A stretch of 64,000 bases of DNA, taken from assembly GCA_977017575.1 (NCBI GenBank), contig CDRNVI010000050.1:41506-105505 (forward strand). Direction: 5' to 3'. A program made the position numbers and the translations under genes. The stretch is from Paramoeba atlantica (Eukaryota; Protista; Discosea). Under the pieces are notes generated by a model. The model was not told the DNA's origin. It ran no database searches and saw nothing but the letters and a program-made list of their open reading frames with translations. This document shows positions 16,998 through 52,289 of this stretch, piece after piece (position 1 is the stretch's first letter; every line of letters begins with the position of its first letter).

Positions 16998-17136
<139 letters not shown>

Positions 17137-17157
17137 AACACTTTCTCCCCCTCTCTC

Positions 17158-21576: not shown

Positions 21577-21964
21577 AAGAGGGGAAAATGTGGTTTATAG
21601 ATATTTTTTTTGAAATCATAAGAAACGAAGGGTGTAGAATATGAAAAAGGGGGAGATATGGTGTTTTATGCTTTTAATGTTATTGGAAATCGAGTGCAAA
21701 GCTTGTTCATGTTACAATTTACAGTACAGGAACATTCTAATATGAAGCGCTGTGATCGCTTACATACTGTAGATAGAAGCTTACAAACTACAGCAACACG
21801 CTTTCCTAAATTTTACAAGCATTGCAGACTTTGAGTTTGTAGTTTTGATGGAGAACGTTGTGGTTCACAACGTTTCAAAACGAACCAATCGATCTCCACC
21901 ATCACAGAAACCAATAGAAAACTCTTTTCTATCCCTTTTCTTCCCCCTCTCACCCCTTACCCCC

Positions 21965-32678: not shown

Positions 32679-33069
32679 AAATGTGTTATTGCGGTGGTTG
32701 TATTCTTTTCCAGGCTCTTCGTTAAACGCGGTGGTTGTTTTCAACTTAGAAGGCACCACTGCTGCGCGCTTCGCGTTGAAAGCTACCTCCGCGTTTAACG
32801 AAGAGCCTAGAAAAGAAAAATTTGGAGAACGATGGACAATTTGGAGAACGAAAATTTAGGAGAATGAAAATATAGATTTGGAGAACGAGTAGTACTTTAC
32901 TTGTTAAACAGAACAGTATGGGCTTTTAGAGGAGAAAAAGTGGAGAAGAAAAACATGAAAACGTGCACTGAAAAACCCCCGGAAAACTACGTTTTAGAAA
33001 TTCACTTCTTCGACAAAGAAAAAAACTTTCTTCCTGTATCACTTTTCTTTGTCAATTAATCTTCGCCTT

Positions 33070-33435
33070 TCAAAACTTCATCTTCTTCACCTGCTTTTTT
33101 GGCTGTGTTTTTTGGCTGCCCTTGCTCTTGCGGTACGTGCTGCATGCATGTTTAGCTTGTTCTGTCGTAGCAAAACAGACATACGCACGTTTGAACTTTC
33201 TAATTATTGTGACAAGTTTTACGTCACCAAAGAAGGCATAATACTCACTTAGATTTTTGTTTGTCATTTCCGCCGGAACATGCTCCACAGTGATCGAGCG
33301 CTCGTCACGCTCGCCCAGAGCTGAACTCAAGTTCATCTCTGATTCGTGCAAGTCATCCCGCTTCCGCTTAACATCACTGATCTTCAGCGATGTATCGCAT
33401 TCTGCGGTGAGGACGTTCTCCGGAAGAGTAGACAT
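33070..33435 (-). CDS. Small RRM-domain protein with basic tail, inside the Helitron distal region
   Basis: ITVEHVP (RNP2-like), LSEYYAFFGDV, RAYVCF (RNP1-like), A..A helix; ATG start. Confidence 0.6.
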   Translation of the reverse strand: MSTLPENVLTAECDTSLKISDVKRKRDDLHESEMNLSSALGERDERSITVEHVPAEMTNKNLSEYYAFFGDVKLVTIIRKFKRAYVCFATTEQAKHACSTYRKSKGSQKTQPKKQVKKMKF

Positions 33436-34106
33436 ATAGGGAGGAAGGGTAAAAAGATAAGGTGATTAAAAAAGTGAATCAGATATTAAACCATGTTCCA
33501 GGATAGTATACGTAGTAGTTATACTAAATGAGTAGGTATACTAAGTGGGTGCGATGAATGGTGAAAGAGATGAAGGTGAATAAAAAAGTGAATCAGATAC
33601 TACTGAACTTCGAGACACGCTGACGCAGGGATGTGATTTACTTCGCTTCGGGGAATTTTTAACAGAGCAGGATGGATACCTCTTCTTTTCGTAGCGGCCG
33701 TGTGAGCGTTCGGATCGCTCGTACTTTTTCGTAATTTTAGTTTCGGACCCTTCTAGGAGGTGCTGGCGAGGGGGGTGCTTTACTTTGTGGTAGGTAATTT
33801 TGAAGGACGCAAGGTTCTGAAATCTTTTTTTTGAAGGGCCCGTTGCGCGGGCCCTTCGAGTGGGTGCAGACCCGCTGGGGCGGGGGGTGCTCTACTTCCT
33901 GGCAGATAATTTTGAAGGAATAGTTTGTTTTTGAAGGTGCTTTTAAAGGAGACTTCTTAATGGAGACATTTTTTTTGGTAGGGGCCACGTGAGCGTTGGG
34001 GTCACACTTCTTCTGCCAAAGCTGAAGACGCCGGGCTTGTGACCGGTATCAAGCGTGCTACCCCCCTGGAGAGGTCTTCCTGAGAAGATGGTTTCATTCT
34101 AATGTC

Positions 34107-35929
34107 TTAGAATTGATAAGACAAATCGGTAAGCCGATTTGCTTTTTCCATGGCCGGAAATTTAGGCCTATGGTAACCTGAATTCAGGTGTGTTCCTGGG
34201 CGATCTGTGCCCATGCCAGGGAGCACTCGAATATCACCGAAGCATTGTGCCCTGGATATTGCTACTGTGAGCTTGGCGAGTCCTCAACCACGTCCTATCA
34301 TTCAAGTCAAGAATAACACCTTTCTTCACGGTGATACCTTGTACTTTGTGATACGTATAGGCAAATCCCAATTCCACTTAAAAGTTTCCTTGGGTTGTCT
34401 TGTCATGGTGCTGCGCCTTTTTGGCGTAAAACTCTACTCCTGACCCCTTCTCAATGCATTGCATAAAAGAAGGGGCTTTTCTTAGATAACGAACACAATC
34501 AATAGTGTCGTATGACAAATCGTCTGACACAAGATCTTTCATTTCAATCACGGTCCCATTCGCAATTTTCAATGTATAAGGAGCAATGTTCTCCGTGATT
34601 ACAACGGGTGCTCCTTTTACAAATACAGAAAATGCTTCAGGGTGTGTGTCAATGAGTTTACCTTGGACGTTATCGCCTGTCCATGCAAACAATGGGCAAT
34701 TGTGACGTCTGGCAAAAATTCTTGCCATTGCGACATTAATCTTGTGTCGTTCAATATTTGTTCCAACAATGACAATTGCATTGCGGAACTTTTCTTGGTC
34801 CTCAGAGGTCAGAGGTTTTACCAATTGGATGAACTTCAACCCCTCATTCGGAGTTTTTCGAACAAGACGCAAGATATCTGAAAATACAGTATCTTGTCGT
34901 GCTCGCATTTGCTGTTTGAGTTCAAACACATGCGAGACTTGAAAAATATTCCCAAAAATGGGATTATTACCAGGAGGACTATCTTCTATGGTAAGAGATG
35001 CTCCTTGTACTGGTCGCAGCTGATAAAAATCTCCCAAAAAGAGCATGTTGATGCCTCCATAGGGGAGCTGCTCATTGCCTTTGATTTGCTGCAATCTAGT
35101 GTTGATACAAGCAAGGAAACACTTGCTGATCATTGACACTTCGTCGACTATGATTAATCGACATTTCTCATACCTTTAGAAGCCTACTGCTTGAAAGATG
35201 TTTCAAATTTCTTGCAGTAGCCCCTATCGGTATGCAGAGTGAAGCGTGTATTGTGCAACAGTGCAGTACTGATGCGGCGATCCCATTGGGCGCCATTGTA
35301 ATACATTGGCTTCCCAGTTCTTGCATTATAAAACGGGAAGCTAGACTTTTCCCGGTTCCGGGGCCACCGAGCAGAAACATACATTTCCGCTCGCGGTCTA
35401 GTTTCCCGTTTAGTAAATTTTCAATTTGATTTACGCACTGTTTCTGTGCTTAGTTCAGTTCAATGGAACTGTTGACTTCTTGAATGTAGCTGCGATCGAA
35501 CGTAATCTCGTCGTATTACTGCGAGCCAGCGGACGATCCTCATTAAAATGAGCTCTGTCCATTGGTGCACTTGGCTCAGATTGAGCCGAAGTTGCAAGTC
35601 GCTCGTTTTGAATCATTTCAGCATAGCGCTCTCTCGCATTTATGACTGAAATATTGGACCTCGTCCTTGTCATCGTCGATGCAAGATCAACATTTTCTTC
35701 AGGGGAGTTCTCAGTAGAACTTCCTAACGCGGCCGTTAAAGTTCACGTTTGTAGTTCGCAGTATGCATTCTGCTGAACCAATCGCTCTTCATTGACCACT
35801 GCAGTGTTCTGCTGTGCTTCAAGAGCATCTTGAAGATGAGGTTCAACCTCTCGGACTTCAAGCTCATTTTCGTACACAATGTTGCGTGCTAATCTTGCTT
35901 CTTCTAGATGGCAAGCATCTTTGCGTTAT
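34107..35929 (-). pseudogene. Helitron PIF1-family helicase, frameshifted
   Basis: GGPGTGKS (I), MAPNGIAA (Ia), IIVDEVSM (II), GDFYQLRPV (III), FAYTYHKVQGITV (V), LTVAISRA (VI), spread over several frames. Confidence 0.9.
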
Positions 35930-35976
35930 ACAAATCTGCCTATCCTATCCTATCCTATAAGACCGATTTGCATCGG

Positions 35977-38900
35977 TTAAGAACACATCCGTTTTTGTCG
36001 TCGCTTCGACGTCTTTCTCTCAGGTGAATTCGCCCTTTCATGCTCCTTGTCCGCTGAACCGGGCGTGGTACGTCTTTCATGCAACTTTGTATTTTTGGCA
36101 TCACATTCCTCAGGCAAACACTCTTTCTTTTCAGGAGAATCCACTCCAGTCTCTACAGGTGGCGAGGTACCCTTTTTGGAGAGAGGATCACCTTCTGCAA
36201 TCTTGAAGTAATCCCGTCTTTTCCCTAATGGCTTAGGTATTTGGCCACAGTGTTTCCGAGGACGATTCATGGCTTGAACGGTTTCTGAGCTAACCCTTTG
36301 AGCTTCTGAGGCACTTGTCGCAGTCTTTCTCCTCTTTATTTCTGAGGCTGGGACTATTTTTCTCGACCCTGCAAGCGCCAAGGTGTCTGCCTTCTCATTG
36401 TAAATGTTCCCGTTGTGGGATTTCACTTTGCACACGTAACACCTTTTATCCATCGATTGGAGCGTTCGAATTTCCCGATCCAATTTCTCAAGGATACCCC
36501 CATTCGGTAGATTGTGATACCCAATGATTCGCCGTCGTAGACGAGTATGATGGAAGAAATTCCATACATAGAACGAATCGGTGTGTATGACAACTGTTTG
36601 AGCCTCATTAGGTATCCTGTCCAGCGCTTCCCTCAGCGATTCAACCTCAGCTCTCTCAGCTGAGCCAGCATCCAATGCTATGGAATAGTATTTGTCTTCT
36701 GTTCCACTCATTCTCAGAACTATTCCCGCACCGGATCTTTGTTCCTTGGACCCCCGCAACTGCCGAACAGAGCCATCAATATACATATGAACCTCACCCT
36801 CACTCATGGGGAACGGATCCGAGCCTTCCTCCACAAATTGTAGCTCATAAGAGCTTTTGCTTTTGACCGCTTGAGTGTGTTTAGTTTTCCACCTTGGAGA
36901 CCTTAATACCTCATACATCGGAAGTGGTTCAAGTTTCTGCCTGAGCTCATCGCATAGCTTTTGCCAGTGTATCCGATCCTGCGAGTAAACAAGCGCCTGC
37001 TCCAGAGTGACCCCTAGATCATTAAAACTTGCTTCGCTAGGAGAAATATTTCTTGTTTTTTCCGTGCTATTCCATTGAACGAGCTCGCGAAACGTAGAGG
37101 AGTGCCTGAGCATGTGGCCAACGATTTTCGCACGGGCAACACGATGCACGGTCGAAAATCGAGGCGTACCACAATACAAGGACTCTAATGGGTAGCAGTG
37201 TCCGAAATCGTCAAGCTTTGCTGAGTTACAAGCGAATCTCCTCATCATATTTACCTCAACCTCCGTTTTTCGAAGCATTTTGTTAGAAAGAGAAAGACAG
37301 GCTGCACCAAACGTTAAAATAGGGTAGATCAAGCAGTCAAACAGGCGTATTTTCGTGGCAGCACTCAGAGGAGAAGCCCAAATGCCACTGAGTTTACGAA
37401 ATGCTGCCCATGTGAGCCTTAACCTGTCCTTGATGGGGGATGATGCTGTAGCATCTTGAAGATGACCAAGATGCCGGTAGGAATCCACAAGAGGAATCTT
37501 GCCAAGCGATCCTGCTCGAAGTTCTCGCGTCCCCCCCGGAACTTTCCCAAAGGCCATCCACGCAGTCTTGGTTTTCCCCACGGCAATCCTCAGATTAGCT
37601 GGTTTTGCCTCATTTGCCGTAGCTTCGATCATTTGCGATATTTCATGTTTCGTGGAAGCTAAAAGTGCTATGTCGTCTGCGTAGTCGATGTCCTTTAGTC
37701 TAAATTTTTGAATTCCCCTGCTTTTCGTCCCGCTGCTCCTTAGAAGAATCCCGAGCGGCTTGTTATCGAGTGCTTTGTTGAGAATCCTATCGATTACAAG
37801 CACAAAGAGATAAGGAGCAAGCACGTCCCCTTGAAGAATTCCTGTTTCAATGGGAAAAGAATCCGTATTTCCGTATGGTGTGCGGACTATTCCTTTTAAA
37901 TCCGAGTACAAGGACATTACCATCCTAGTAAGCGCGGGTCCGACATGAAAGGCATTCAATGCAGCACGGATCGCATGAAACGATACCGAGGGGAATGCTT
38001 TTGCGAAGTCCATGAATGCCACTGCAATGCCTTTCTGGCCCCTGGTCGCACGAACTCTTGCATCATTCAAAATGATTTGCGCCCCTGCCGTGGACCTTTC
38101 TGGCCGAAAACCAAATTGACTGTCGCGAAGGAGCGGCTCGATGGATGGTCTGATTCTTTTCAGGATCATTGCATTCATCAATTTAACCGCACTGTTCACG
38201 AGACAGATTGGCCGCCAATTCGCTATTTGTGTCAGGTCGCCTTTTTTTGGAATAGGCACCTGAAGGACAATTTTCCAGGACGCAGGCGAAACCCCTGTTC
38301 GATGAACCTCGTTTATAATATGTAATAAGGATTTTCTCAGCTCAGCATGTTCTGTGATCATTCTGAGTGCCTCCGCCGGAATTTGGTCTATTCCAGGTGC
38401 CTTGTTGCGCGCTAGTCTAATGATGCCGCCCTCGAGCTCTTCTACAGTGAAACTTTCATCGTTGATTGGTACTTTCGGGCTGACTACTTTGTCAAATTTT
38501 ATATCTTTATCTCCGCGATCATCGGACCCCATACGAGCAAAGAAATCTTTAACAATGTTAAGAGTTTCCCTTGTCGACGAGGTCTCGATGCAAAGAGTCT
38601 CCCTGTACAAACCGCAAATTCTACGTAGCGTACGCCACGGATTAGAACGGTTTCGCCGCAGACCTGCTTCAATTTCGGCGCATTCTTGCCCAATCTGCGC
38701 CTCAATTTCTTCTCCGTGCTCTTTTAGCACTTCCTTGAAGTGGTCCGGTTTTCGACTCTGAAGAAATAAGTCGCGAAACCCTGAGATGCGCGGTGTTTCT
38801 GTACCCGGTGGTGTGGTTTCTGTCCCTGTAGGTGCGTTGGTCGTTTTTGTGGTTCGGTCCTTTTTTGAGAGTCTTTTCGCTGTGTGTACCATATTTTCCG

Positions 38901-40569
38901 ATAAGTGTTCCCATGTGATCTCTTCCTCTTTCTTCGCCATTTCCCACACTGCTTGCTGGAAGGATGCCTTCTTCTCTTCATCTCCAAGTCTTGGCCAGGG
39001 TACCTTGCTTTGCCCCCCTGTACCTTTAGAACGCCACTTGATTTTCACATCCGCCATAACGACGCAGTGTACTGTAGGCACTGGCGCCTTGAGTACTTTG
39101 TGCCTCCTAATGCTGGAGGCAAAGCGCTCACTGACCATGATGTGGTCAAGCTGTCTCCGCACCTTGTTGTCCCCACGCCTTTTGCTACCTCCCTTTTTGC
39201 CGACCTCCCCTTTTACGTGCATGTACTCGCAGGCCTTGTCCCCATTTTCCTCTCCTTCCCTTCCCCTCTTCACCATACCGTTGTTATCCGTCCCCTCTGG
39301 CTCTGATCCTTTCCTTCCCATTTCCACCTTTCCTTCTTCCCCCTTCTGCCCCAGCTTCTCTGTTCCTACGTTGCGACGGTCCTTTGTCTCCGCCCTCCTG
39401 CCCGGCAGCTCACATGTCCATTTCCTCTTGCTCGGGCAGAGGGTGTGTGCTGACTTACAGCCAATGGAGCACAAGAGGCCTTTCAGCTGAGAGACCGCTG
39501 GGGGATCCATGCTCGGATTCGTCACGAGCGTTATCGGTGCATTGAAATCCCCCATGACCAATAAAGGTCTTCGTTTCCGTTCAGCCTTGACCTCACGACA
39601 CGCCTTGTCCAAGTCACCCAGAAATGCCGCATGAACGGCTTCTGAGGAGTCCCGTATTGGGGCATAGACATTGAACAAAGTGCCGGTCCCCTCTTCCAGG
39701 GGATACTCAGCTCCCATCACCCTGTTGCTCACCATCCAAACCTTCCGAAACGCATGCCGGCTCACTATGGCCATGCCATTATATGAATCGCGTGCGGCGG
39801 CCGACTGCAAATACAGGTGAAACCTCTCCCCTAGGTTTTCAACCTGCCTGTAGAGGATTCCATCCTCATGTCCTTCCTTCGAGAAATTGTATCTGGTCTC
39901 CTGAAGGCACATGACACCAACCCCCCTTACCTGCATGAAAGCAAGCACCTCGTTCAAACGGGTGCATCTTCGAAGAGAGAATTCATCTTCCCCCTCGAGT
40001 TTTAACGTCGTAACATTAAGCGTTGCAACGGTGGTGTTCTCCTTCACAGCGGAACCTTTGAGGTTCTCCGAATCTCGTTGGGCGTGTGTGCCACGCGACG
40101 CCCAGTGTGACCGAGGGCGGTGACGGGAGCTCCTTCGTTTCGCCTTTGCCGGGTTACTCACCTGCACCGCGCAGAGCACGACACCTGTATTCGGTAAGGG
40201 GGGAAAGGGGAGAGTCGTGTGCGGCCTCGCCACGTACCGAACACGAAATGTACCGGCCAAAGGTTCACCTCGAGTTACCGAGGATCCCCCCTGAGTATGC
40301 CAGCCTACGCTTTTCAGATAAGCCGGCCCCTCACACACGACCTCGCCCTCCCAAACAAACAAAGTGTCGCAACAGTTGTCGTGTCTCCACGCGACGCGAA
40401 GATGAGCCCCAACGCGGACAAACTTACAGAGCGCCCGCACCGCCCTCAGGCGGAGTTTAGCAGGCCCCTCTCGCTCGGGTGAACGAAAGATGACCCCCCG
40501 ACCACGCTTGGTCCGTGTAAGGGTTTCAAAAACCTCTGTCCCCTTACACGTGCCGGAAGCATCCGCCAT
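35977..40569 (-). CDS. Intact LINE polyprotein (1530 aa): unknown N-domain, APE endonuclease, reverse transcriptase, RNase H
   Basis: APE: LNVTTL, CLQETR, NVYAP, MGDFNA, QLDHIMVS. RT: NWRPICL, QFGFRPERST, DFAKAF, LQGDVLAP, YADD. RNH: YIDGS, AERAE, HTDS, SHNG...NEKADTLA. Confidence 0.95.
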   Translation of the reverse strand: MADASGTCKGTEVFETLTRTKRGRGVIFRSPEREGPAKLRLRAVRALCKFVRVGAHLRVAWRHDNCCDTLFVWEGEVVCEGPAYLKSVGWHTQGGSSVTRGEPLAGTFRVRYVARPHTTLPFPPLPNTGVVLCAVQVSNPAKAKRRSSRHRPRSHWASRGTHAQRDSENLKGSAVKENTTVATLNVTTLKLEGEDEFSLRRCTRLNEVLAFMQVRGVGVMCLQETRYNFSKEGHEDGILYRQVENLGERFHLYLQSAAARDSYNGMAIVSRHAFRKVWMVSNRVMGAEYPLEEGTGTLFNVYAPIRDSSEAVHAAFLGDLDKACREVKAERKRRPLLVMGDFNAPITLVTNPSMDPPAVSQLKGLLCSIGCKSAHTLCPSKRKWTCELPGRRAETKDRRNVGTEKLGQKGEEGKVEMGRKGSEPEGTDNNGMVKRGREGEENGDKACEYMHVKGEVGKKGGSKRRGDNKVRRQLDHIMVSERFASSIRRHKVLKAPVPTVHCVVMADVKIKWRSKGTGGQSKVPWPRLGDEEKKASFQQAVWEMAKKEEEITWEHLSENMVHTAKRLSKKDRTTKTTNAPTGTETTPPGTETPRISGFRDLFLQSRKPDHFKEVLKEHGEEIEAQIGQECAEIEAGLRRNRSNPWRTLRRICGLYRETLCIETSSTRETLNIVKDFFARMGSDDRGDKDIKFDKVVSPKVPINDESFTVEELEGGIIRLARNKAPGIDQIPAEALRMITEHAELRKSLLHIINEVHRTGVSPASWKIVLQVPIPKKGDLTQIANWRPICLVNSAVKLMNAMILKRIRPSIEPLLRDSQFGFRPERSTAGAQIILNDARVRATRGQKGIAVAFMDFAKAFPSVSFHAIRAALNAFHVGPALTRMVMSLYSDLKGIVRTPYGNTDSFPIETGILQGDVLAPYLFVLVIDRILNKALDNKPLGILLRSSGTKSRGIQKFRLKDIDYADDIALLASTKHEISQMIEATANEAKPANLRIAVGKTKTAWMAFGKVPGGTRELRAGSLGKIPLVDSYRHLGHLQDATASSPIKDRLRLTWAAFRKLSGIWASPLSAATKIRLFDCLIYPILTFGAACLSLSNKMLRKTEVEVNMMRRFACNSAKLDDFGHCYPLESLYCGTPRFSTVHRVARAKIVGHMLRHSSTFRELVQWNSTEKTRNISPSEASFNDLGVTLEQALVYSQDRIHWQKLCDELRQKLEPLPMYEVLRSPRWKTKHTQAVKSKSSYELQFVEEGSDPFPMSEGEVHMYIDGSVRQLRGSKEQRSGAGIVLRMSGTEDKYYSIALDAGSAERAEVESLREALDRIPNEAQTVVIHTDSFYVWNFFHHTRLRRRIIGYHNLPNGGILEKLDREIRTLQSMDKRCYVCKVKSHNGNIYNEKADTLALAGSRKIVPASEIKRRKTATSASEAQRVSSETVQAMNRPRKHCGQIPKPLGKRRDYFKIAEGDPLSKKGTSPPVETGVDSPEKKECLPEECDAKNTKLHERRTTPGSADKEHERANSPERKTSKRRQKRMCS

Positions 40570-40584
40570 GTTTTTATAATTAGA

Positions 40585-43500
40585 TTACAAAAAACGATGG
40601 TCTTACAAAAAACGATGGTCTTACAAAAAACGATGGTCTTACAAAAAACGATGGTCTTACAAAAAACGATGGTCTTACAAAAAACGATGGTCTTACAAAA
40701 AACGATGGTCTTACAAAAAACGATGGTCTTACAAAAAACGATGGTCTTACAAAAAACGATGGTCTTACAAAAAACGATGGTCTTACAAAAAACGATGGTC
40801 TTACAAAAAACGATGGTCTTACAAAAAACGATGGTCTTACAAAAAACGATGGTCTTACGAAAAACGATGGTCTTACAAAAAACGATGGTCTTACAAAAAA
40901 CGATGGTCTTACAAAAAACGATGGTCTTACAAAAAACGATGGTCTTACAAAAAACGATGGTCTTACAAAAAACGATGGTCTTACAAAAAACGATGGTCTT
41001 ACAAAAAACGATGGTCTTACAAAAAACGATGGTCTTACAAAAAACGATGGTCTTACAAAAAACGATGGTCTTACAAAAAACGATGGTCTTACAAAAAACG
41101 ATGGTCTTACAAAAAACGATGGTCTTACAAAAAACGATGGTCTTACGAAAAACGATGGTCTTACAAAAAACGATGGTCTTACAAAAAACGATGGTCTTAC
41201 AAAAAACGATGGTCTTACAAAAAACGATGGTCTTACAAAAAACGATGGTCTTACAAAAAACGATGGTCTTACAAAAAACGATGGTCTTACAAAAAACGAT
41301 GGTCTTACAAAAAACGATGGTCTTACAAAAAACGATGGTCTTACAAAAAACGATGGTCTTACAAAAAACGATGGTCTTACAAAAAACGATGGTCTTACAA
41401 AAAACGATGGTCTTACAAAAAACGATGGTCTTACAAAAAACGATGGTCTTACAAAAAACGATGGTCTTACAAAAAACGATGGTCTTACAAAAAACGATGG
41501 TCTTACAAAAAACGATGGTCTTACAAAAAACGATGGTCTTACGAAAAACGATGGTCTTACAAAAAACGATGGTCTTACAAAAAACGATGGTCTTACAAAA
41601 AACGATGGTCTTACAAAAAACGATGGTCTTACAAAAAACGATGGTCTTACAAAAAACGATGGTCTTACAAAAAACGATGGTCTTACAAAAAACGATGGTC
41701 TTACAAAAAACGATGGTCTTACAAAAAACGATGGTCTTACAAAAAACGATGGTCTTACAAAAAACGATGGTCTTACAAAAAACGATGGTCTTACAAAAAA
41801 CGATGGTCTTACAAAAAACGATGGTCTTACGAAAAACGATGGTCTTACAAAAAACGATGGTCTTACAAAAAACGATGGTCTTACAAAAAACGATGGTCTT
41901 ACAAAAAACGATGGTCTTACAAAAAACGATGGTCTTACAAAAAACGATGGTCTTACAAAAAACGATGGTCTTACAAAAAACGATGGTCTTACAAAAAACG
42001 ATGGTCTTACAAAAAACGATGGTCTTACAAAAAACGATGGTCTTACAAAAAACGATGGTCTTACAAAAAACGATGGTCTTACAAAAAACGATGGTCTTAC
42101 AAAAAACGATGGTCTTACAAAAAACGATGGTCTTACAAAAAACGATGGTCTTACAAAAAACGATGGTCTTACAAAAAACGATGGTCTTACAAAAAACGAT
42201 GGTCTTACAAAAAACGATGGTCTTACAAAAAACGATGGTCTTACAAAAAACGATGGTCTTACAAAAAACGATGGTCTTACAAAAAACGATGGTCTTACAA
42301 AAAACGATGGTCTTACAAAAAACGATGGTCTTACAAAAAACGATGGTCTTACAAAAAACGATGGTCTTACAAAAAACGATGGTCTTACAAAAAACGATGG
42401 TCTTACAAAAAACGATGGTCTTACAAAAAACGATGGTCTTACAAAAAACGCTGATCTTACGAAAAACGATGGTCTTACGAAAAACGATGGTCTTACAAAA
42501 AACGATGGTCTTACAAAAAACGATGGTCTTACAAAAAACGATGGTCTTACAAAAAACGATGGTCTTACAAAAAACGATGGTCTTACGAAAAACGATGGTC
42601 TTACAAAGAACGATGGTCTTACAAAAAACGATGGTCTTACAAAAAACGATGGTCTTACAAAAAACGATGGTCTTACAAAAAACGATGGTCTTACAAAAAA
42701 CGATGGTCTTACAAAAAACGATGGTCTTACAAAAAACGATGGTCTTACAAAAAACGATGGTCTTACAAAAAACGATGGTCTTACAAAAAACGATGGTCTT
42801 ACAAAAAACGATGGTCTTACAAAAAACGATGGTCTTACAAAAAACGATGGTCTTACAAAAAACGATGGTCTTACAAAAAACGATGGTCTTACAAAAAACG
42901 ATGGTCTTACAAAAAACGATGGTCTTACAAAAAACGATGGTCTTACAAAAAACGATGGTCTTACAAAAAACGATGGTCTTACAAAAAACGATGGTCTTAC
43001 AAAAAACGATGGTCCTACAAAAAACGATGGTCTTACAAAAAACGATGGTCTTACAAAAAACGATGGTCTTACAAAAAACGATGGTCTTACAAAAAACGAT
43101 GGTCTTACAAAAAACGATGGTCTTACAAAAAACGATGGTCTTACAAAAAACGATGGTCTTACAAAAAACGATGGTCTTACAAAAAACGATGGTCTTACAA
43201 AAAACGATGGTCTTACAAAAAACGATGGTCTTACAAAAAACGATGGTCTTACAAAAAACGATGGTCTTACAAAAAACGATGGTCTTACAAAAAACGATGA
43301 TCTTACAAAAAACGATGGTCTTACAAAAAACGATGGTCTTACAAAAAACGATGGTCTTACAAAAAACGATGGTCTTACAAAAAACGATGGTCTTACAAAA
43401 AACGATGGTCTTACAAAAAACGATGGTCTTACAAAAAACGATGGTCTTACAAAAAACGATGGTCTTACAAAAAACGATGGTCTTACAAAAAACGATGGTC

Positions 43501-46500
43501 TTACAAAAAACGATGGTCTTACAAAAAACGATGGTCTTACAAAAAACGATGGTCTTACAAAAAACGATGGTCTTACAAAAAACGATGGTCTTACAAAAAA
43601 CGATGGTCTTAAAAAAACGATGGTCCTACAAAAAACGATGGTCTTACAAAAAACGATGGTCTTACAAAAAACGATGGTCTTACAAAAAACGATGGTCTTA
43701 CAAAAAACGATGGTCTTACAAAAAACGATGGTCTTACAAAAAACGATGGTCTTACAAAAAACGATGGTCTTACAAAAAACGATGGTCTTACAAAAAACGA
43801 TGGTCTTACAAAAAACGATGGTCTTACAAAAAACGATGGTCTTACAAAAAACGATGGTCTTACAAAAAACGATGGTCTTACAAAAAACGATGGTCTTACA
43901 AAAAACGATGGTCTTACAAAAAACGATGGTCTTACAAAAAACGATGGTCTTACAAAAAACGATGGTCTTACAAAAAACGATGGTCTTACAAAAAACGATG
44001 GTCTTACAAAAAACGATGGTCTTACAAAAAACGATGGTCTTACAAAAAACGATGGTCTTACAAAAAACGATGGTCTTACAAAAAACGATGGTCTTACAAA
44101 AAACGATGGTCTTAAAAAAACGATGGTCCTACAAAAAACGATGGTCTTACAAAAAACGATGGTCTTACAAAAAACGATGGTCTTACAAAAAACGATGGTC
44201 TTACAAAAAACGATGGTCTTACAAAAAACGATGGTCTTACAAAAAACGATGGTCTTACAAAAAACGATGGTCTTACAAAAAACGATGGTCTTACAAAAAA
44301 CGATGGTCTTACAAAAAACGATGGTCTTACAAAAAACGATGGTCTTACAAAAAACGATGGTCTTACAAAAAACGATGGTCTTACAAAAAACGATGGTCTT
44401 ACAAAAAACGATGGTCTTACAAAAAACGATGGTCTCACAAAAAACGATGGTCTTACAAAAAACGATGGTCTTACAAAAAACGATGGTCTTACAAAAAACG
44501 ATGGTCTTACAAAAAACGATGGTCTTACAAAAAACGATGGTCTTACAAAAAACGATGGTCTTACAAAAAACGATGGTCTTACAAAAAACGATGGTCTTAC
44601 AAAAAACGATGGTCTTACAAAAAACGATGGTCTTACAAAAAACGATGGTCTTACAAAAAACGATGGTCTTACAAAAAACGATGGTCTTACAAAAAACGAT
44701 GGTCTTACAAAAAACGATGGTCTTACAAAAAACGATGGTCTTACAAAAAACGATGGTCTTACAAAAAACGATGGTCTTACAAAAAACGATGGTCTTACAA
44801 AAAACGATGGTCTTACAAAAAACGATGGTCTTACAAAAAACGATGGTCTTACAAAAAACGATGGTCTTACAAAAAACGATGGTCTTAAAAAAACGATGGT
44901 CCTACAAAAAACGATGGTCTTACAAAAAACGATGGTCTTACAAAAAACGATGGTCTTACAAAAAACGATGGTCTTACAAAAAACGATGGTCTTACAAAAA
45001 ACGATGGTCTTACAAAAAACGATGGTCTTACAAAAAACGATGGTCTTACAAAAAACGATGGTCTTACAAAAAACGATGGTCTTACAAAAAACGATGGTCT
45101 TACAAAAAACGATGGTCTTACAAAAAACGATGGTCTTACAAAAAACGATGGTCTTACAAAAAACGATGGTCTTACAAAAAACGATGGTCTTACAAAAAAC
45201 GATGGTCTTACAAAAAACGATGGTCTTACAAAAAACGATGGTCTTACAAAAAACGATGGTCTTACAAAAAACGATGGTCTTACAAAAAACGATGGTCTTA
45301 CAAAAAACGATGGTCTTACAAAAAACGATGGTCTTACAAAAAACGATGGTCTTACAAAAAACGATGGTCTTACAAAAAACGATGGTCTTAAAAAAACGAT
45401 GGTCCTACAAAAAACGATGGTCTTACAAAAAACGATGGTCTTACAAAAAACGATGGTCTTACAAAAAACGATGGTCTTACAAAAAACGATGGTCTTACAA
45501 AAAACGATGGTCTTACAAAAAACGATGGTCTTACAAAAAACGATGGTCTTACAAAAAACGATGGTCTTACAAAAAACGATGGTCTTACAAAAAACGATGG
45601 TCTTACAAAAAACGATGGTCTTACAAAAAACGATGGTCTTACAAAAAACGATGGTCTTACAAAAAACGATGGTCTTACAAAAAACGATGGTCTTACAAAA
45701 AACGATGGTCTCACAAAAAACGATGGTCTTACAAAAAACGATGGTCTTACAAAAAACGATGGTCTTACAAAAAACGATGGTCTTACAAAAAACGATGGTC
45801 TTACAAAAAACGATGGTCTTACAAAAAACGATGGTCTTACAAAAAACGATGGTCTTACAAAAAACGATGGTCTTACAAAAAACGATGGTCTTACAAAAAA
45901 CGATGGTCTTACAAAAAACGATGGTCTTACAAAAAACGATGGTCTTACAAAAAACGATGGTCTTACAAAAAACGATGGTCTTACAAAAAACGATGGTCTT
46001 ACAAAAAACGATGGTCTTACAAAAAACGATGGTCTTACAAAAAACGATGGTCTTACAAAAAACGATGGTCTTACAAAAAACGATGGTCTTACAAAAAACG
46101 ATGGTCTTACGAAAAACGATGGTCTTACAAAAAACGATGGTCTTACAAAAAACGATGGTCTTACAAAAAACGATGGTCTTACAAAAAACGATGGTCTTAC
46201 AAAAAACGATGGTCTTACAAAAAACGATGGTCTTACAAAAAACGATGGTCTTACAAAAAACGATGGTCTTACAAAAAACGATGGTCTTACAAAAAACGAT
46301 GGTCTTACAAAAAACGATGGTCTTACAAAAAACGATGGTCTTACAAAAAGCGATGGTCTTACAAAAAACGATGGTCTTACAAAAAACGATGGTCTTACAA
46401 AAAACGATGGTCTTACAAAAAACGATGGTCTTACAAAAAACGATGGTCTTACAAAAAACGATGGTCTTACAAAAAACGATGGTCTTACAAAAAACGATGG

Positions 46501-49276
46501 TCTTACAAAAAACGATGGTCTTACAAAAAACGATGGTCTTACAAAAAACGATGGTCTTACAAAAAACGATGGTCTTACAAAAAACGATGGTCTTACGAAA
46601 AACGATGGTCTTACAAAAAACGATGGTCTTACAAAAAACGATGGTCTTACAAAAAACGATGGTCTTACAAAAAACGATGGTCTTACAAAAAACGATGGTC
46701 TTACAAAAAACGATGGTCTTACAAAAAACGATGGTCTTACAAAAAACGATGGTCTTACGAAAAACGATGGTCTTACAAAAAACGATGGTCTTACAAAAAA
46801 CGATGGTCTTACAAAAAACGATGGTCTTACAAAAAACGATGGTCTTACAAAAAACGATGGTCTTACAAAAAACGATGGTCTCACAAAAAACGATGGTCTT
46901 ACAAAAAACGATGGTCTTACAAAAAACGATGGTCTTACAAAAAACGATGGTCTTACAAAAAACGATGGTCTTACAAAAAACGATGGTCTTACAAAAAACG
47001 ATGATCTTACAAAAAACGATGGTCTTACAAAAAACGATGGTCTTACAAAAAACGATGGTCTTACAAAAAACGATGGTCTTACAAAAAACGATGGTCTTAC
47101 AAAAAACGATGGTCTTACGAAAAACGATGGTCTTACAAAGAACGATGGTCTTACAAAAAACGATGGTCTTACAAAAAACGATGGTCTTACAAAAAACGAT
47201 GGTCTTACAAAAAACGATGGTCTTACAAAAAACGATGGTCTTACAAAAAACGATGGTCTTACAAAAAACGATGGTCTTACAAAAAACGATGGTCTTACAA
47301 AAAACGATGGTCTTACAAAAAACGATGGTCTTACAAAAAACGATGGTCTTACAAAAAACGATGGTCTTACAAAAAACGATGGTCTTACAAAAAACGATGG
47401 TCTTACAAAAAACGATGGTCTTACAAAAAACGATGGTCTTACAAAAAACGATGGTCTTACAAAAAACGATGGTCTTACAAAAAACGATGGTCTTACAAAA
47501 AACGATGGTCTTACAAAAAACGATGGTCTTACAAAAAACGATGGTCTTACAAAAAACGATGGTCTTACAAAAAACGATGGTCTTACAAAAAACGATGGTC
47601 TTACAAAAAACGATGGTCTTACAAAAAACGATGGTCTTACAAAAAACGATGGTCTTACAAAAAACGATGGTCTTACAAAAAACGATGGTCTTACAAAAAA
47701 CGATGGTCTTACAAAAAACGATGGTCTTACAAAAAACGATGGTCTTACAAAAAACGATGGTCTTACAAAAAACGATGGTCTTACAAAAAACGATGGTCTT
47801 ACAAAAAACGATGGTCTTACAAAAAACGATGGTCTTACAAAAAACGATGGTCTTACAAAAAACGATGGTCTTACAAAAAACGATGGTCTTACAAAAAACG
47901 ATGGTCTTACAAAAAACGATGGTCTTACAAAAAACGATGGTCTTACAAAAAACGATGGTCTTACAAAAAACGATGGTCTTACAAAAAACGATGGTCTTAC
48001 AAAAAACGATGATCTTACAAAAAACGATGGTCTTACAAAAAACGATGGTCTTACAAAAAACGATGGTCTTACAAAAAACGATGGTCTTACAAAAAACGAT
48101 GGTCTTACAAAAAACGATGGTCTTACAAAAAACGATGGTCTTACAAAAAACGATGGTCTTACAAAAAACGATGGTCTTACAAAAAACGATGGTCTTACAA
48201 AAAACGATGGTCTTACAAAAAACGATGGTCTTACAAAAAACGATGGTCTTACAAAAAACGATGGTCTTACAAAAAACGATGGTCTTACAAAAAACGATGG
48301 TCTTACAAAAAACGATGGTCTTACAAAAAACGATGGTCTTACAAAAAACGATGGTCTTACAAAAAACGATGGTCTTACAAAAAACGATGGTCTTACAAAA
48401 AACGATGGTCTTACAAAAAACGATGGTCTTACAAAAAACGATGGTCTTACAAAAAACGATGGTCTTACAAAAAACGATGGTCTTACAAAAAACGATGGTC
48501 TTACAAAAAACGATGGTCTTACAAAAAACGATGGTCTTACAAAAAACGATGGTCTTACAAAAAACGATGGTCTTACAAAAAACGATGGTCTTACAAAAAA
48601 CGATGGTCTTACAAAAAACGATGGTCTTACAAAAAACGATGGTCTTACAAAAAACGATGGTCTTACAAAAAACGATGGTCTTACAAAAAACGATGGTCTT
48701 ACAAAAAACGATGGTCTTACAAAAAACGATGGTCTTACAAAAAACGATGGTCTTACAAAAAACGATGGTCTTACAAAAAACGATGGTCTTACAAAAAACG
48801 ATGGTCTTACAAAAAACGATGGTCTTACAAAAAACGATGGTCTTACAAAAAACGATGGTCTTACAAAAAACGATGGTCTTACAAAAAACGATGGTCTTAC
48901 AAAAAACGATGGTCTTACAAAAAACGATGGTCTTACAAAAAACGATGATCTTACAAAAAACGATGGTCTTACAAAAAACGATGGTCTTACAAAAAACGAT
49001 GGTCTTACAAAAAACGATGGTCTTACAAAAAACGATGGTCTTACAAAAAACGATGGTCTTACAAAAAACGATGGTCTTACAAAAAACGATGGTCTTACAA
49101 AAAACGATGGTCTTACAAAAAACGATGGTCTTACAAAAAACGATGGTCTTACAAAAAACGATGGTCTTACAAAAAACGATGGTCTTACAAAAAACGATGG
49201 TCTTACAAAAAACGATGGTCTTACAAAAAACGATGGTCTTACAAAAAACGATGGTCTTACAAAAAATGATGGTCTT
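40585..49276. repeat. Tandem array of an 18-bp unit (TTACAAAAAACGATGGTC), ~483 copies, 8.7 kb
   Basis: Seen directly; highly homogeneous with sparse variant units; ends ~16 bp upstream of the LINE ATG. Confidence 0.99.
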
Positions 49277-49278
49277 GT

Positions 49279-49550
49279 AAAAGTTTCCACCAGTGGGGGC
49301 CATGTTCAACAGGACGGGAAGTTCACCGTGTTCTGCCAACCCAGTGCGGCGGCACTTGTGAGCTGCTCCGTTTCCGGCCTGGCCCGGTTCAGTGCACGTT
49401 ACACGCAGGGCAACCTCTGCGCTACCGCAGATTCTCCCCGGTACCACACTGTAAGGGAGGCGGCGAACTTCCCGTCCATTAAGAACAGGTGCCACGGCGA
49501 ATCCTTATTTCGCTGCCCAAAGGGTGACAGGTTTGGAACCCCAGCACCCC
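49279..49550 (-). ncRNA. 7SL: Full-length eukaryote-type SRP (7SL) RNA, ~270 nt, ending in TTTT
   Basis: Helix 8 GGGC-CAGG-CCG-GAAA-CGG-AGCA-GCTC; helix 6 TCTGCG-GTAG-CGCAGA (GNAR loop); long helix 5 GGACGGGAAGTTCGCCG / CGGTGAACTTCCCGTCC; small Alu domain GCTG-GGGTTCCAAACC-TGTCA(UGUNR)-CCCTTTGGG-CAGC. Confidence 0.88.
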
Positions 49551-49562
49551 AACAAATCTGCC

Positions 49563-51490
49563 GCGTTCTCTGTATTCTTAGAAGCATGTAAAAGCCGAAG
49601 AAAGTTGCACATTGTGTCATACTTTCCAGGTGTATTTACTTTCGCTTCATTGAGAAGCTTTTCAAACCCTTCTAGGGTCATTTCATGGCTCGGTGAGCCT
49701 TTCGTCCATGGGGAAAACAATGCCACCATGCGTTTCCCTACTCGAAGCTGGCTTCGAGCTCGTGTCCCAGGTTCTTTTGAAGAACTCAATATGGGAAAAC
49801 CTGGTATAGCTGGCACAGTGTGCAAAGAGCGCAACTGTTGCTCAACAATATATCCAGGCTCAAATTCCGGGAGGCCCTCAATTTCCTCAAAGGCGTATCT
49901 CCCATTAGCACGACGTCCGCGACGACGTCTTCGATTTGTCCCTGACTCAAAATCTGAATCATGATCGGGCTCTTCTTGAGCTAGCTCAGCTCTTTTCTTC
50001 TTTACGCTGACAATGCTTGCATAGGAATACAGTTCAAGGTCTTGAAGATCTTCGCCCCTGTGCATGTAACGCACATGGAGCGGTGCAATAACTGCACAAT
50101 CATGTTCGGTGATCATTATAGGAGCCTCTAAGATACCGTTGTCGAACTCTATATCGGAGTCTTGTGACGAATCATCGTCACTGATTTCTATATATCTGTG
50201 ATCTAACTCACTTGAGATGTTTGCCAGGAACTTCATTACACGGTTCATATTGATCCATGTGAAGTTATGGCTCATGTACTCGGAGGGTTGGCCGAGACAA
50301 AAGACAGTTGCCATTTCGATTGAAACTTCCATCTTTCGATGTGTCATGTTCGACAATTTCTGTAAAACTAAGCGTGCCATCGGAATGTCAGTTTGCACTC
50401 TGTGCTCTGAATTCAGACCCCTTTGAAGGTGGTCATTGGCTGCGCGAAGTGCTGGTACAATGTACACAGGTGGACCAATGTTCTTGCTCATATATTTTAT
50501 GAGATACTGCATAATTTTTATGCCGGGGCCTTCGCTCCCAATGAAAACTGCACATGTATTGCATCTTACGCAAGCAGTGAGTGTTTCATTGTACGGAACG
50601 GTGATGGATTCCCGTTTAGTGTCTTGTGTCGGGTCATGGTTATTGCGCAGAAGCACAATCAGAGACCGTTCATCAAGTACTGACCAAATGGCATCATTTT
50701 TAATCGACCGTGTTGGAGGCTTGAGCCGGAATTCCGGTTGTCCAGATTCATCCATCTGAACCTCAACCTCTCCAACTTCCGTTTCATTTTCATGAAGTAC
50801 GGATGGAATGCCATATCGGTATTTGTTCTTGTTTATGTTTCCTTTCATTTTTAAAAACATGGGTCTGTGACCAACGTGCTGCTGAACATCAACAGCACTT
50901 TTGGCCACATGTTCCCTGAAATATCCTTTTCATCAGGAATGATATGTAGTCCTCCGCGATACATCTTTGAGTAGTCGAGCGTTGCAGGGCCGTAAAGCTC
51001 CTTACTGATCCTTCGCGCCCACTCGTGCAGATCAGAGCGCATCGTCGTACTCAAAGACTTCGCGAGACCATCGTGCTCCTTCACAATGTGAATTAATTCG
51101 GAGACGTAGTGTGGACTAAGATTCGTCCATAGTACACTATGAAAGTGTAGCGCACCTCGTTTCTGGCATTCTACGACACCAAAAAATGCTCGAGGGCGAC
51201 CAAAGAGGCCTTCAAGAACGTCACGTTCCTTCTTTACCTCATCTACATTCGACATTCCGTACAATTTGGTAAGAAGAGTACGGATTTGCCGTTCGAAAGG
51301 TTGGCCCGCATTTCCTGCATTTTTTCGCTCTCATCATTTGTAATGATTCTTAGAGCTAGATTTTTATCGTTCTTGTTTGGACCCACTGCGATCCTGTAAG
51401 TTGGCAGCCCGTATCGCCTGTATAAGGCGTAGATCTGACCTTGTGATGCCTTTCGCTTTGCTGGCGAAAAGGGTATCGTTTTTTTCATGG
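49563..51490 (-). pseudogene. Helitron Rep (HUH endonuclease) region, frameshifted and N-terminally truncated
   Basis: RRYGLPTYRIAVGP (motif I), FFGVVECQKRGALHFHSVLW (HUH motif II), MQYLIKYMSK (two-Tyr motif III). Confidence 0.88.
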
Positions 51491-52289
51491 TCGAGCAAAT
51501 TTTTTCGAAAACATTAGCTTTCGAAAACAAACCGCAGAAAGGGTAGCCGGGGTCTTGGCGCGCATTTTCCACCCCCCTACCCGGGGGTGACCCCCCCGCG
51601 TATCCGCAGGACGGGTCCGCCAAGTTCGGATTTTTTCGGAAAAAAAAATTTGAAAAAAAATTCAACTTAGCTAAAAAAATGACAAAAAAATATTTTTCCA
51701 AAATCGTTTCCCCTATTGTATTTTGACAGTTTGGGACCTACACTAGCTTTCTCCGCAGTTGCTTTCGCAAGGTATCCCTTCTTCAAGACGTGGTACGCCC
51801 GCGAAATTGGCCCATTTTTGACTAAAAAGGGTGAAAAAGTATTTTTCGGACCCCAAGGGGCCTTTTTGTGTCGAAAGAATGGTATGGTTGGAGTCGTATT
51901 CTCCACCCAATACGTTCGGTAGGCTTTCATTCATGCCTAAGAGTAATTTCCCAAGCGCAAATGTCTGATTTAATGCTCTGAGAGCGAAAATAGCTAAAAT
52001 TGACCCCATTTTTACCTGAAAATCGGCTTTTTTTGGCTCCAATCCTTCCGGTTTCTCCTGTTTTCGAAGCCAATTTTTGTTTTTTAGGCTCTTTCGTATA
52101 ATACTTCACTGTATATCGCGGCGATAATTTTCCATCCCCCCCTTGGTACGCGCAGGAGGGGTCCGACAAGGTCAAATTTTCTGAAATTTTTGGGTTGACC
52201 AAAAATTTTTTTCTTTGACCCAAAAAAAAGTAAAAATATTATTTTTCCAAAATCGACTCCTAAAACGTATTTTAAGTATGATATGTTAA

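What the first reader, a model, noticed from the sequence alone, without database searches (positions are those of the whole stretch)
35930..49562. 7SL-RNA-headed LINE: one TSD-bounded unit containing SRP RNA, an 8.7 kb array and an intact APE-RT-RNase H ORF
Seen: the 11-mer ACAAATCTGCC occurs at 35930-35940 and 49552-49562, and removing everything between rejoins Helitron sequence (...ENAADL|Y...). In sense (minus) order the unit is a ~270-nt RNA with all SRP hallmarks ending in TTTT, then the 18-bp array, a 16-nt spacer, a 1530-aa intact ORF, a hairpin and (GGATA)3. Established: 7SL gives rise to non-autonomous SINEs (Alu/B1), and LINE RTs make chimeras by template switching onto small RNAs (U6-L1). 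Inference: either this is an autonomous LINE lineage that adopted 7SL as its 5' module (promoter, RNP/ribosome or ER targeting), or it is a single 7SL-LINE chimeric retrocopy. The TTTT and the T6 in every array unit would stop Pol III, so a simple Pol III promoter role is doubtful.
Basis: partly seen in the sequence, partly recalled or inferred. Interest (0 to 1): 0.92.

Follow-up and report, generated by a model that had tools for sequence, protein, structure and literature searches.

The report
One-off 7SL RNA–LINE chimeric retrocopy
A jumping gene (LINE) in a kinetoplastid endosymbiont copied a whole signal-recognition-particle RNA onto its front end during one insertion; this is a known kind of accident, not a new LINE lineage with a 7SL module.

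Summary
One 11-bp target-site duplication (TSD) encloses, in sense order on the minus strand:
- a complete SRP/7SL RNA (Rfam 74.6 bits)
- 483 copies of an 18-bp unit
- an intact 1530-aa APE-RT-RNase H ORF
- a 6-bp hairpin
- (GGATA)3

A paralogous Helitron copy is uninterrupted at this site and carries a single copy of the 11-mer.

The headline interpretation, a 7SL-headed LINE lineage, is not supported. Four other full-length copies of the same LINE (98.6-99.7% identical) and one 5'-truncated copy lack 7SL.

The genuine 7SL gene lies elsewhere, 94 nt downstream of a divergent tRNA-Lys in a tRNA cluster, which is the kinetoplastid Pol III layout. The copied segment matches it from transcript nucleotide +1 to the terminator U-run and not beyond.

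This is therefore a single, very young chimeric retrocopy. The reverse transcriptase most likely switched from the LINE RNA's 5' end to the 3' U-tail of a mature 7SL RNA, as in U6/L1 and 7SL/L1 chimeras. It is unusual in that the LINE part is full-length.

The array is a family trait. It consists of the LINE's own first 16 nt plus GA, in 0.8 to 483 copies per element. How it grows is unresolved.

The host is probably the Perkinsela-like endosymbiont of Paramoeba atlantica. Earlier scan notes report similar chimeras elsewhere in this genome; I did not check them.

The parts
49552..49562 (-). 5' copy of the target-site duplication (sense GGCAGATTTGT)
   Evidence: Exact 11-mer, present twice in the window, 0.03 expected by chance. 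Present once in the uninterrupted Helitron paralog L005.
49546..49551 (-). 6-nt filler TGGGGT between the TSD and 7SL; identical to 7SL nt 3-8
   Evidence: Read directly. Homology to the genuine gene starts at G 49545. Reading it as a re-copy of the 7SL 5' end is my inference; I estimate the chance of such a match at about 0.002.
49279..49545 (-). Complete retro-copied SRP (7SL) RNA, from +1 G to the terminal TTTT
   Evidence: Rfam RF00017 at 74.6 bits. 100% identical to 7SL contigs with different flanks in runs X2 and X4. Identical except for one A to the gene at L007:4954-5226.
40585..49278 (-). Array of 483 18-bp units (sense GTAAGACCATCGTTTTTT), each being the LINE's first 16 nt plus GA. 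The first unit (49261-49278) is aberrant.
   Evidence: TRF. Unit parsing and higher-order variant pattern. Copies L004 and L001 have only the single 5' terminus, while L003 and L002 have 17-19 units.
40570..40584 (-). Rest of the LINE 5' UTR (TCTAATTATAAAAAC) before the ATG
   Evidence: identical in all full-length copies.
35977..40569 (-). Intact 1530-aa ORF with APE endonuclease, reverse transcriptase and RNase H
   Evidence: Other intact 1529-1530-aa copies exist (P0059, P0063, P0066).
35962..35977 (-). 3' hairpin: 6-bp stem ACCGAT/ATCGGT with a GCAA loop
   Evidence: Sequence and centroid fold. The energy z-score alone is not significant (-1.06). Conserved in all copies.
35941..35955 (-). 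(GGATA)3 tail
   Evidence: Other copies have 3-5 repeats.
35930..35940 (-). 3' copy of the target-site duplication
49563..51483 (-). Interrupted Helitron, upstream part (target DNA)
   Evidence: Collinear with paralog L005, which carries Helitron_like_N.
34378..35929 (-). Interrupted Helitron, downstream part (target DNA), including the PIF1-like helicase ORF at 34378-35139

Best explanation
This is a single, recent retrotransposition event in which the LINE's reverse transcriptase made a bipartite chimera. Target-primed reverse transcription began at the (GGATA)n/hairpin 3' end of a full-length LINE RNA in a Helitron copy. It ran to the LINE's 5' end, which either already carried 18-nt terminal repeats or acquired them during or after insertion. 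It then switched template onto the 3' oligo-U end of a mature Pol III 7SL transcript and copied that to its first nucleotide. It re-copied six nucleotides of the 7SL 5' end, and the cDNA was joined to the target, leaving an 11-bp duplication. Shown here: the anatomy, the exact transcript boundaries of the 7SL part, the separate genuine 7SL gene, the empty paralogous site, and the absence of 7SL from other copies. Inferred: the template switch itself, use of the U-run/T6 microhomology, and the timing of array growth. The 7SL part is a passenger, not a functional module of the element.
For: (1) One TSD encloses everything, and an uninterrupted paralog has a single copy of it. (2) The 7SL part is collinear and in the same orientation as the LINE, with no tail or TSD of its own. 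(3) The genuine gene at L007:4954-5226 sits 94 nt from a divergent tRNA-Lys in a four-tRNA cluster. Homology between gene and chimera starts at the G of GCTGGGG and ends in the T-run; the gene continues TCGGCG while the chimera continues ACAAGACC. Short-read contigs in X2 and X4 carry the same 267 nt at 100% identity with the gene's flanks. (4) Four other full-length 5' ends and one 5'-truncated copy of the same family lack 7SL; three of these copies have clear TSDs of their own (L003 TTGGGTGACAC, L004 AGATTATAT, L008 GTACTAAAAC), and Rfam finds no small RNA at any of those 5' ends. (5) The 7SL U-run sits in register with a unit's T6, allowing up to 4 nt of microhomology. (6) The architecture meets the published criteria for LINE template-switch chimeras, which include 7SL (PMC2104539; bioRxiv 10.1101/2025.02.02.635956).
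Against: In the published class the LINE part is usually 5'-truncated at a random point; here it is full-length with an 8.7-kb array in between. No read-level proof of contiguity was obtained. The only other assembly (ENA ERZ24900291, contig ctg4008l = L002) joins the same 3' half of this LINE to another copy's 5' half, 19-unit array and flank. Contigs of runs X2 and X4 show only the genuine 7SL context. Run X1 has a 274-nt contig that reaches only 5 and 2 nt into the chimeric junctions, and X1 may be the data the window was assembled from. Template switching itself cannot be observed from sequence.
Confidence: 0.8

Rival explanations
1. An autonomous LINE lineage has adopted 7SL as a heritable 5' module for promoter activity, RNP assembly or ER/ribosome targeting.
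For: The ORF is intact and the composite lies inside one TSD. If the composite were transcribed from upstream it could in principle propagate.
Against: All other examined copies of the family lack 7SL. No other 7SL-headed copy was noted in 312 scanned windows of this genome (a lead only). The real gene's likely promoter, the upstream tRNA-Lys, was not copied. T4 and T6 runs would terminate Pol III (established knowledge). The 7SL part is identical to the gene, so there has been no time as a lineage.
Confidence: 0.04
2. 5' transduction: a source LINE sat just downstream of a 7SL gene, and a read-through transcript starting at 7SL +1 was retrotransposed.
For: The 7SL part starts at +1, as a transcript from the 7SL promoter would.
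Against: The genuine gene's downstream flank (TCGGCGTTG...) is absent from the chimera; the junction falls exactly in the terminator U-run. Pol III would have to read through T4 and then 483 T6 runs. In L007 the gene is followed by unrelated sequence, not an array.
Confidence: 0.05
3. Two separate events: a 7SL retropseudogene inserted later, exactly at the 5' edge of an existing LINE insertion.
For: LINE machinery can mobilise small RNAs in trans (established for L1).
Against: There is no second TSD and no (GGATA)n or hairpin tail after the 7SL. The outer TSD pairs the 7SL side with the LINE 3' end.
Confidence: 0.03
4. Assembly artefact: the 7SL-array or array-LINE join, or the array length, is a mis-join through repeats.
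For: A second assembly is a mosaic at this very LINE. All 13 substitutions lie in the 5' 2.9 kb, followed by about 10 kb of 100% identity. Arrays of 18-mers are very abundant in the read sets.
Against: A mis-join cannot create matching TSDs plus collinear Helitron flanks around the unit. The 7SL is bounded on one side by the TSD and on the other by array units that occur only at this LINE's 5' end. Only the array's length is really at risk.
Confidence: 0.05

Closest known systems
U6/L1, 5S/L1 and 7SL/L1 bipartite chimeric retrocopies of mammals, and MINE/MGL chimeras of Magnaporthe (template switching during LINE reverse transcription; PMC2104539; bioRxiv 10.1101/2025.02.02.635956)
   Same: A full-length small cellular RNA sits at the 5' side in sense orientation, fused directly to LINE sequence, with one TSD around both, the LINE's own 3' tail, and each chimera being a unique event.
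   Different: The LINE part is not 5'-truncated; it is complete and coding, with an 8.7-kb expansion of its 5' terminus between the two parts. The LINE is a hairpin/(GGATA)n-tailed APE-RT-RNase H element of a kinetoplastid, not L1 or MGL.
7SL-derived SINEs (Alu, B1)
   Same: 7SL sequence mobilised by LINE machinery.
   Different: Those are short, non-autonomous, multi-copy elements transcribed by Pol III from internal promoters. This is a single 13.6-kb copy whose 7SL ends in a terminator and lacks the upstream tRNA promoter element of the kinetoplastid gene.
Mouse L1 5' monomer arrays
   Same: Tandem units at the LINE 5' end whose number varies between otherwise near-identical copies (0.8, 17, 19 and 483 here).
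   Different: Units here are 18 bp, not about 200 bp, and consist of the element's own first 16 nt plus GA. Promoter activity is untested.
End-to-end template jumping of the R2 reverse transcriptase (Bibillo & Eickbush 2004, as cited in PMC2104539)
   Same: A jump from the 5' end of one RNA to the 3' end of another, with few or no shared bases, would give exactly this junction.
   Different: That is a biochemical property shown for R2. It is only inferred here, for an APE-type LINE.
ingi/L1Tc-clade LINEs of kinetoplastids (reported in Perkinsela, PMC5601477)
   Same: Kinetoplastid host and a single long ORF with APE, RT and RNase H.
   Different: The 5' UTR is only 31 nt, with no Rfam ribozyme hit in the window, so there is no sign of a Pr77/HDV-like hallmark. 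The tail is (GGATA)n rather than poly(A). Clade membership was not tested by phylogeny.

Membership tests
Bipartite chimeric retrocopy by LINE template switching | The 5' part is a full-length copy of a cellular RNA | tested here: met
   Homology to the genuine 7SL gene runs from +1 G to the terminator T-run and stops there.
Bipartite chimeric retrocopy by LINE template switching | The 3' part is a LINE copy truncated at a random 5' position | tested here: not met
   The LINE part is full-length and is preceded by 483 repeats of its own 5' terminus. The switch occurred at the template's end, not internally.
Bipartite chimeric retrocopy by LINE template switching | Both parts are directly joined in the same transcriptional orientation | tested here: met
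   The 7SL TTTT is followed at once by the first array unit, and both are on the minus strand.
Bipartite chimeric retrocopy by LINE template switching | One pair of short direct repeats flanks the whole chimera, and the empty site has a single copy | tested here: met
   11-bp TSD; uninterrupted paralog L005 and read contigs.
Bipartite chimeric retrocopy by LINE template switching | Each chimera is a unique event, and ordinary copies of the LINE lack the head | tested here: met
   L001, L002 (5' part), L003, L004 and L008 lack 7SL.
SRP RNA (Rfam clan CL00003) | Covariance-model score above the gathering threshold over the full model | tested here: met
   RF00017 at 74.6 bits against 70, model positions 1-299. 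The genuine gene scores 71.6 bits.
Functional kinetoplastid 7SL gene | A divergent tRNA gene about 95 bp upstream that supplies the A/B boxes | tested here: not met
   ARAGORN finds no tRNA anywhere in the window. The genuine locus has tRNA-Lys 94 nt upstream. The requirement is known from trypanosomatids (PMC4950102) and is assumed, not shown, for this organism.
7SL-derived SINE | Short, non-autonomous and multi-copy, with a 7SL-derived head | tested here: not met
   A single 13.6-kb unit with an intact ORF; no second copy in the window or in eight fetched loci.
5' transduction | The extra 5' sequence continues into the source locus's downstream flank | tested here: not met
   The gene's downstream flank is absent; the junction lies in the U-run.
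LINE with 5' monomer (promoter) array | The number of tandem 5' units varies between copies | tested here: met
   0.8 units (L004, L001), 17 (L003), 19 (L002) and 483 (window).
LINE with 5' monomer (promoter) array | The units have promoter activity | not testable with these tools
   The only RNA run available laid nothing on the stretch.
ingi/L1Tc clade | Pr77/HDV-like ribozyme hallmark at the 5' end, a poly(A) tail, and RT phylogeny | tested here: inconclusive
   No ribozyme family reached the Rfam threshold. The 5' UTR is 31 nt and the tail is (GGATA)n. No reference ingi/L1Tc sequence was available for a tree, and the named protein hits are only remote.

The most novel reading that the evidence does not exclude
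This LINE's reverse transcriptase habitually re-copies template ends. On reaching an RNA's 5' end it restarts a few to 16 nt downstream. That would explain three things at once: the 18-bp arrays (the LINE's first 16 nt + GA, up to 483 copies), the TGGGGT filler (7SL nt 3-8 copied twice), and the L003 junction, where target and LINE-5'-end pieces alternate three times. The same end-jumping habit would make it unusually prone to capture Pol III RNAs whole (7SL here; 5S, SL and pre-rRNA chimeras are reported by other unchecked notes on this genome). It would then be a natural system for watching composite retroelements form.
Probability: 0.25. Interest if true: 0.65.

Novelty: new member of a known kind. 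Interest (0 to 1): 0.42.

Why it matters
The finding gives a cleanly resolved example, outside mammals and fungi, of a LINE reverse transcriptase fusing a complete small RNA to its own cDNA. Source gene, transcript boundaries, empty site and sister copies are all in hand.

The event is young: the 7SL part is identical to its gene, the ORF is intact and the TSD is perfect. The LINE part is full-length, so the switch happened at the very end of the template. That speaks to how 5' ends are handled in target-primed reverse transcription and how SINE-like composites could start.

It also removes a tempting over-reading. In kinetoplastids a 7SL copy cannot carry its promoter along, because that lies in an upstream tRNA gene.

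The variable 18-bp 5' array is the less ordinary feature and deserves its own study.

Tried and rejected
- **Exact-protein look-up of the window's LINE ORF.** Not on record.
- **Look-ups of two small ORFs spanning the 7SL-TSD junction in the ENA assembly.** Not on record, which is uninformative.
- **Protein search with the Helitron ORF next to the junction.** It found only an 86% paralog. That paralog gave the empty site but not the orthologous locus.
- **RNA evidence.** The one RNA run laid nothing.
- **Related LINE families at 65% identity (L006, L007).** Their 5' ends lie off the fetched DNA or contig, so conservation of the array across families could not be tested.
- **LINE clade assignment.** The Atlas and homology searches gave only unnamed or remote relatives.
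- **Organism identification from an RNB protein via the Atlas.** Uninformative. A ClpB ORF did work.
- **Simple microhomology model for array growth (considered and rejected).** A jump from nt 1 back to nt 16-18 has no matching bases at the junction, and the recurrent variant blocks (71-unit period) show copy-of-copy growth rather than 483 independent copies of one template.
- **Host-amoeba origin of the 7SL (rejected).** The genuine gene has the kinetoplastid tRNA-linked layout.
Full report
**Observation**

- The 11-mer ACAAATCTGCC occurs only at 35930-35940 and 49552-49562, with 0.03 matches expected by chance.
- Rfam's Metazoa_SRP model matches 49279-49544 on the minus strand over its full length, at 74.6 bits against a gathering score of 70.
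- Tandem Repeats Finder reports one 18-bp array at 40585-49276, with 483 copies and 99% matches.
- The ORF at 35977-40569 (minus, 1530 aa) carries an AP-type endonuclease, a reverse transcriptase and an RNase H.

Read in sense, the unit is:
- TSD
- TGGGGT
- 7SL ending in TTTT
- array
- TCTAATTATAAAAAC
- ATG...ORF...TAA, overlapping a 6-bp stem with a GCAA loop
- CTTATA
- (GGATA)3
- TSD

These parts are read.

**It is an insertion into a Helitron**

I joined the 5' flank, one TSD copy and the 3' flank, and aligned the result to a paralogous copy from another assembly of the same organism (L005). It aligns as one collinear 2.4-kb segment at 91.65%. The paralog reads ...GAACGC-GGCAGATTTGT-ATCGACGC..., with one copy of the 11-mer and no gap. 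The same uninterrupted paralog appears as loose ends at 49552 in contigs of three DNA runs. The flanks carry a PIF1-like helicase (34378-35139), and the paralog carries Helitron_like_N.

**Organism**

A ClpB/HSP100 ORF 16 kb away (16924-19758) gives the following identities:

| Compared with | Identity |
|---|---|
| EukProt protein of Paramoeba atlantica (MMETSP0151_2) | 100% |
| Perkinsela sp. CCAP 1560/4 | 76% |
| Trypanosomatids | about 65% |
| Amoebozoa | about 58% |

The window therefore most likely comes from the Perkinsela-like kinetoplastid endosymbiont of P. atlantica. This rests on a single gene. Perkinsela is reported to hold many ingi-type LINEs and SL fragments associated with retrotransposons (PMC5601477).

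**Other copies of the LINE lack 7SL**

A protein search found a 90%-identity cluster of 24 members, all in ENA assembly ERZ24900291. The loci I fetched show the following:

| Locus | 5' end | TSD |
|---|---|---|
| L004 | Full-length copy starting ...CGTTTTTTGTAATCTAATT..., with no array and no 7SL | AGATTATAT |
| L001 | Starts CCATCGTTTTTTGTAATCT, with no array | none evident |
| L003 | 17 units, preceded by three copies of the target sequence interleaved with short pieces of the LINE 5' end | TTGGGTGACAC |
| L008 | 5'-truncated at nt 425 | GTACTAAAAC |

Rfam finds no SRP RNA or other small RNA at any of these 5' ends.

**The genuine 7SL gene**

Scanning fetched loci with Rfam turned up a second SRP RNA at L007:4954-5226 (71.6 bits). 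It lies 94 nt downstream of a divergently oriented tRNA-Lys(UUU) within a Met/Gln/Ala/Lys tRNA cluster. This is the arrangement through which trypanosomatid 7SL and snRNA genes receive their Pol III A/B-box promoter elements (PMC4950102, citing Nakaar et al. 1994 and Ben-Shlomo et al. 1997).

The alignment shows the two 7SL sequences are identical except for one A in an A-run. Similarity begins at the G of GCTGGGG and ends in the T-run. After that the gene continues TCGGCGTTG..., while the window continues ACAAGACC.... Short-read contigs in runs X2 (629 nt) and X4 carry the window's 267 nt at 100% identity with the gene's flanks.

The captured segment is therefore a mature Pol III transcript, not a piece of DNA with its flanks. 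The retrocopy left the likely promoter behind, and there is no tRNA in the window.

**Mechanism**

The best fit is template switching during target-primed reverse transcription. This matches the published class of bipartite chimeric retrocopies, which have these features:
- a full-length cellular RNA at the 5' side
- the same orientation as the LINE part
- a direct junction
- a common TSD
- the LINE's own tail

7SL is among the known partners (PMC2104539; bioRxiv 10.1101/2025.02.02.635956).

Two junction details are suggestive:
- The 7SL U-run occupies the exact phase of a unit's T6 (TTTT-ACAAGACCATCA-TTTTTT-GTAAGACCATCG...). Up to four A residues of nascent cDNA could have paired with the 7SL 3' end.
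- The six bases between the TSD and 7SL (TGGGGT) equal 7SL nt 3-8, as if the enzyme re-copied the template's end before the cDNA was joined to the target. I estimate the chance of this match at about 0.002.

The main departure from the known class is that the LINE part is complete rather than randomly truncated.

**The array**

Each unit is the LINE's own first 16 nt (CCATCGTTTTTTGTAA) plus GA, and the last unit runs into the unique 5' UTR. Copy number varies among near-identical elements: about 0.8 (L004, L001), 17 (L003), 19 (L002) and 483 here. The array always lies inside the TSD where a TSD is visible.

Of the 483 units, 451 are consensus. The variants recur in higher order: a block E...GH...GH repeats with a 71-unit period, GH pairs lie 28 units apart, and CD occurs twice. 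The array therefore grew at least partly by copying existing array, either by unequal exchange or slippage or by jumps back on an array-bearing template. It did not arise from 483 independent copies of one terminus.

Summed word depth over the array is roughly 2,500-4,100 times that of the 7SL contig in the three DNA runs. This is a rough figure, but it suggests thousands of units genome-wide. Whether the array is made by the reverse transcriptase, acts as a promoter, or supplies splice acceptors (each unit creates T6-GTAAG) is open.

**Contiguity caveat**

ENA contig ctg4008l (L002) matches the window from inside the array down to 25976 at 99.89%. Upstream, however, it has only 19 units, a different flank, no TSD partner and no 7SL. 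All 13 substitutions against the window lie in the LINE's first 2.9 kb, and the next ~10 kb is identical. That contig is therefore a mosaic of two LINE copies, from either an assembly switch or a real recombinant.

The window's version is the internally consistent one, because its two ends share a TSD and collinear Helitron flanks. Even so, I could not obtain long reads. X1's 274-nt contig reaches only 5 and 2 nt into the chimeric junctions, and X1 may be the assembly's own data. X2 and X4 show only the genuine 7SL context. The array length in particular remains unverified.

**Verdict**

It is a new member of a known kind, notable for three things:
- the full-length, intact LINE part
- the very recent date
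- the kinetoplastid-endosymbiont host

Earlier notes of this scan list a 5S-headed LINE, an SL/LINE-tail chimera, a pre-rRNA/L1-like chimera and other 18-mer arrays in the same genome. I did not check those. If they hold, template jumping is frequent in this genome.

Noticed in passing
L007:4384-5226 (ENA ERZ24900291 ctg2335l): The genuine 7SL RNA gene of this organism sits 94 nt downstream of a divergent tRNA-Lys(UUU), inside a tRNA-Met/Gln/Ala/Lys cluster. The trypanosomatid-type extragenic Pol III promoter layout thus appears conserved in a Perkinsela-like early-branching kinetoplastid.
   Followed up: partly
L002:1-12863 versus window 37707-40925: ENA contig ctg4008l is a mosaic. Its 5' flank, 19-unit array and first 2.9 kb of LINE come from another copy (13 substitutions), followed by 100% identity to the window for about 10 kb. 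This is either an assembly switch inside the repeat or ectopic recombination between LINE copies.
   Followed up: partly
L003:9590-9700: Complex 5' junction of another LINE copy. The target sequence CATTGGGTGAC(AC) occurs three times, interleaved with short LINE-5'-end pieces (ATCGTTTTTT-GGGGTTT, ATCGTTT), before a 17-unit array. It looks like repeated template jumps between the target and the RNA end.
   Followed up: partly
L001 (ENA ctg3719c, flagged circular, 28 kb): A 10.7-kb unit is repeated in tandem. It contains a full-length LINE copy, a fragment of a second, SINE-like repeats and 67-bp satellite arrays in both orientations. This is either a tandem amplification or a circular molecule.
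   Followed up: no
window 49240-49288 in runs X1, X2, X4: Summed k-mer depth of the 18-bp unit is about 2,500-4,100 times that of the 7SL contig, suggesting several thousand units (tens of kb) genome-wide.
   Followed up: no
window 16924-19761, 11206-14961, 21845-24202: Long intron-less host genes lie next to the transposon-rich half of the window: ClpB/HSP100, a MIF4G protein and a GHMP kinase. The ClpB ties the contig to the P. atlantica holobiont and to kinetoplastids.
   Followed up: partly
window 32688-35929 and 49563-52270; L005:9226-11977: Helitron-like elements (Helitron_like_N, PIF1 helicase) occur in several copies in a kinetoplastid genome. L005 and L006 also carry Tc1/mariner-type DDE_3 and DDE_Tnp_4 ORFs. 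A 2021 paper (PMC8101967) described Merlin as the first DNA transposon in kinetoplastids.
   Followed up: no
window 58840-60846: A further 668-aa ORF with an Exo_endo_phos domain, probably another LINE family, lies beside SINE-like repeats at 61.2-63.8 kb that recur next to LINE copies in L001, L003 and L004.
   Followed up: no
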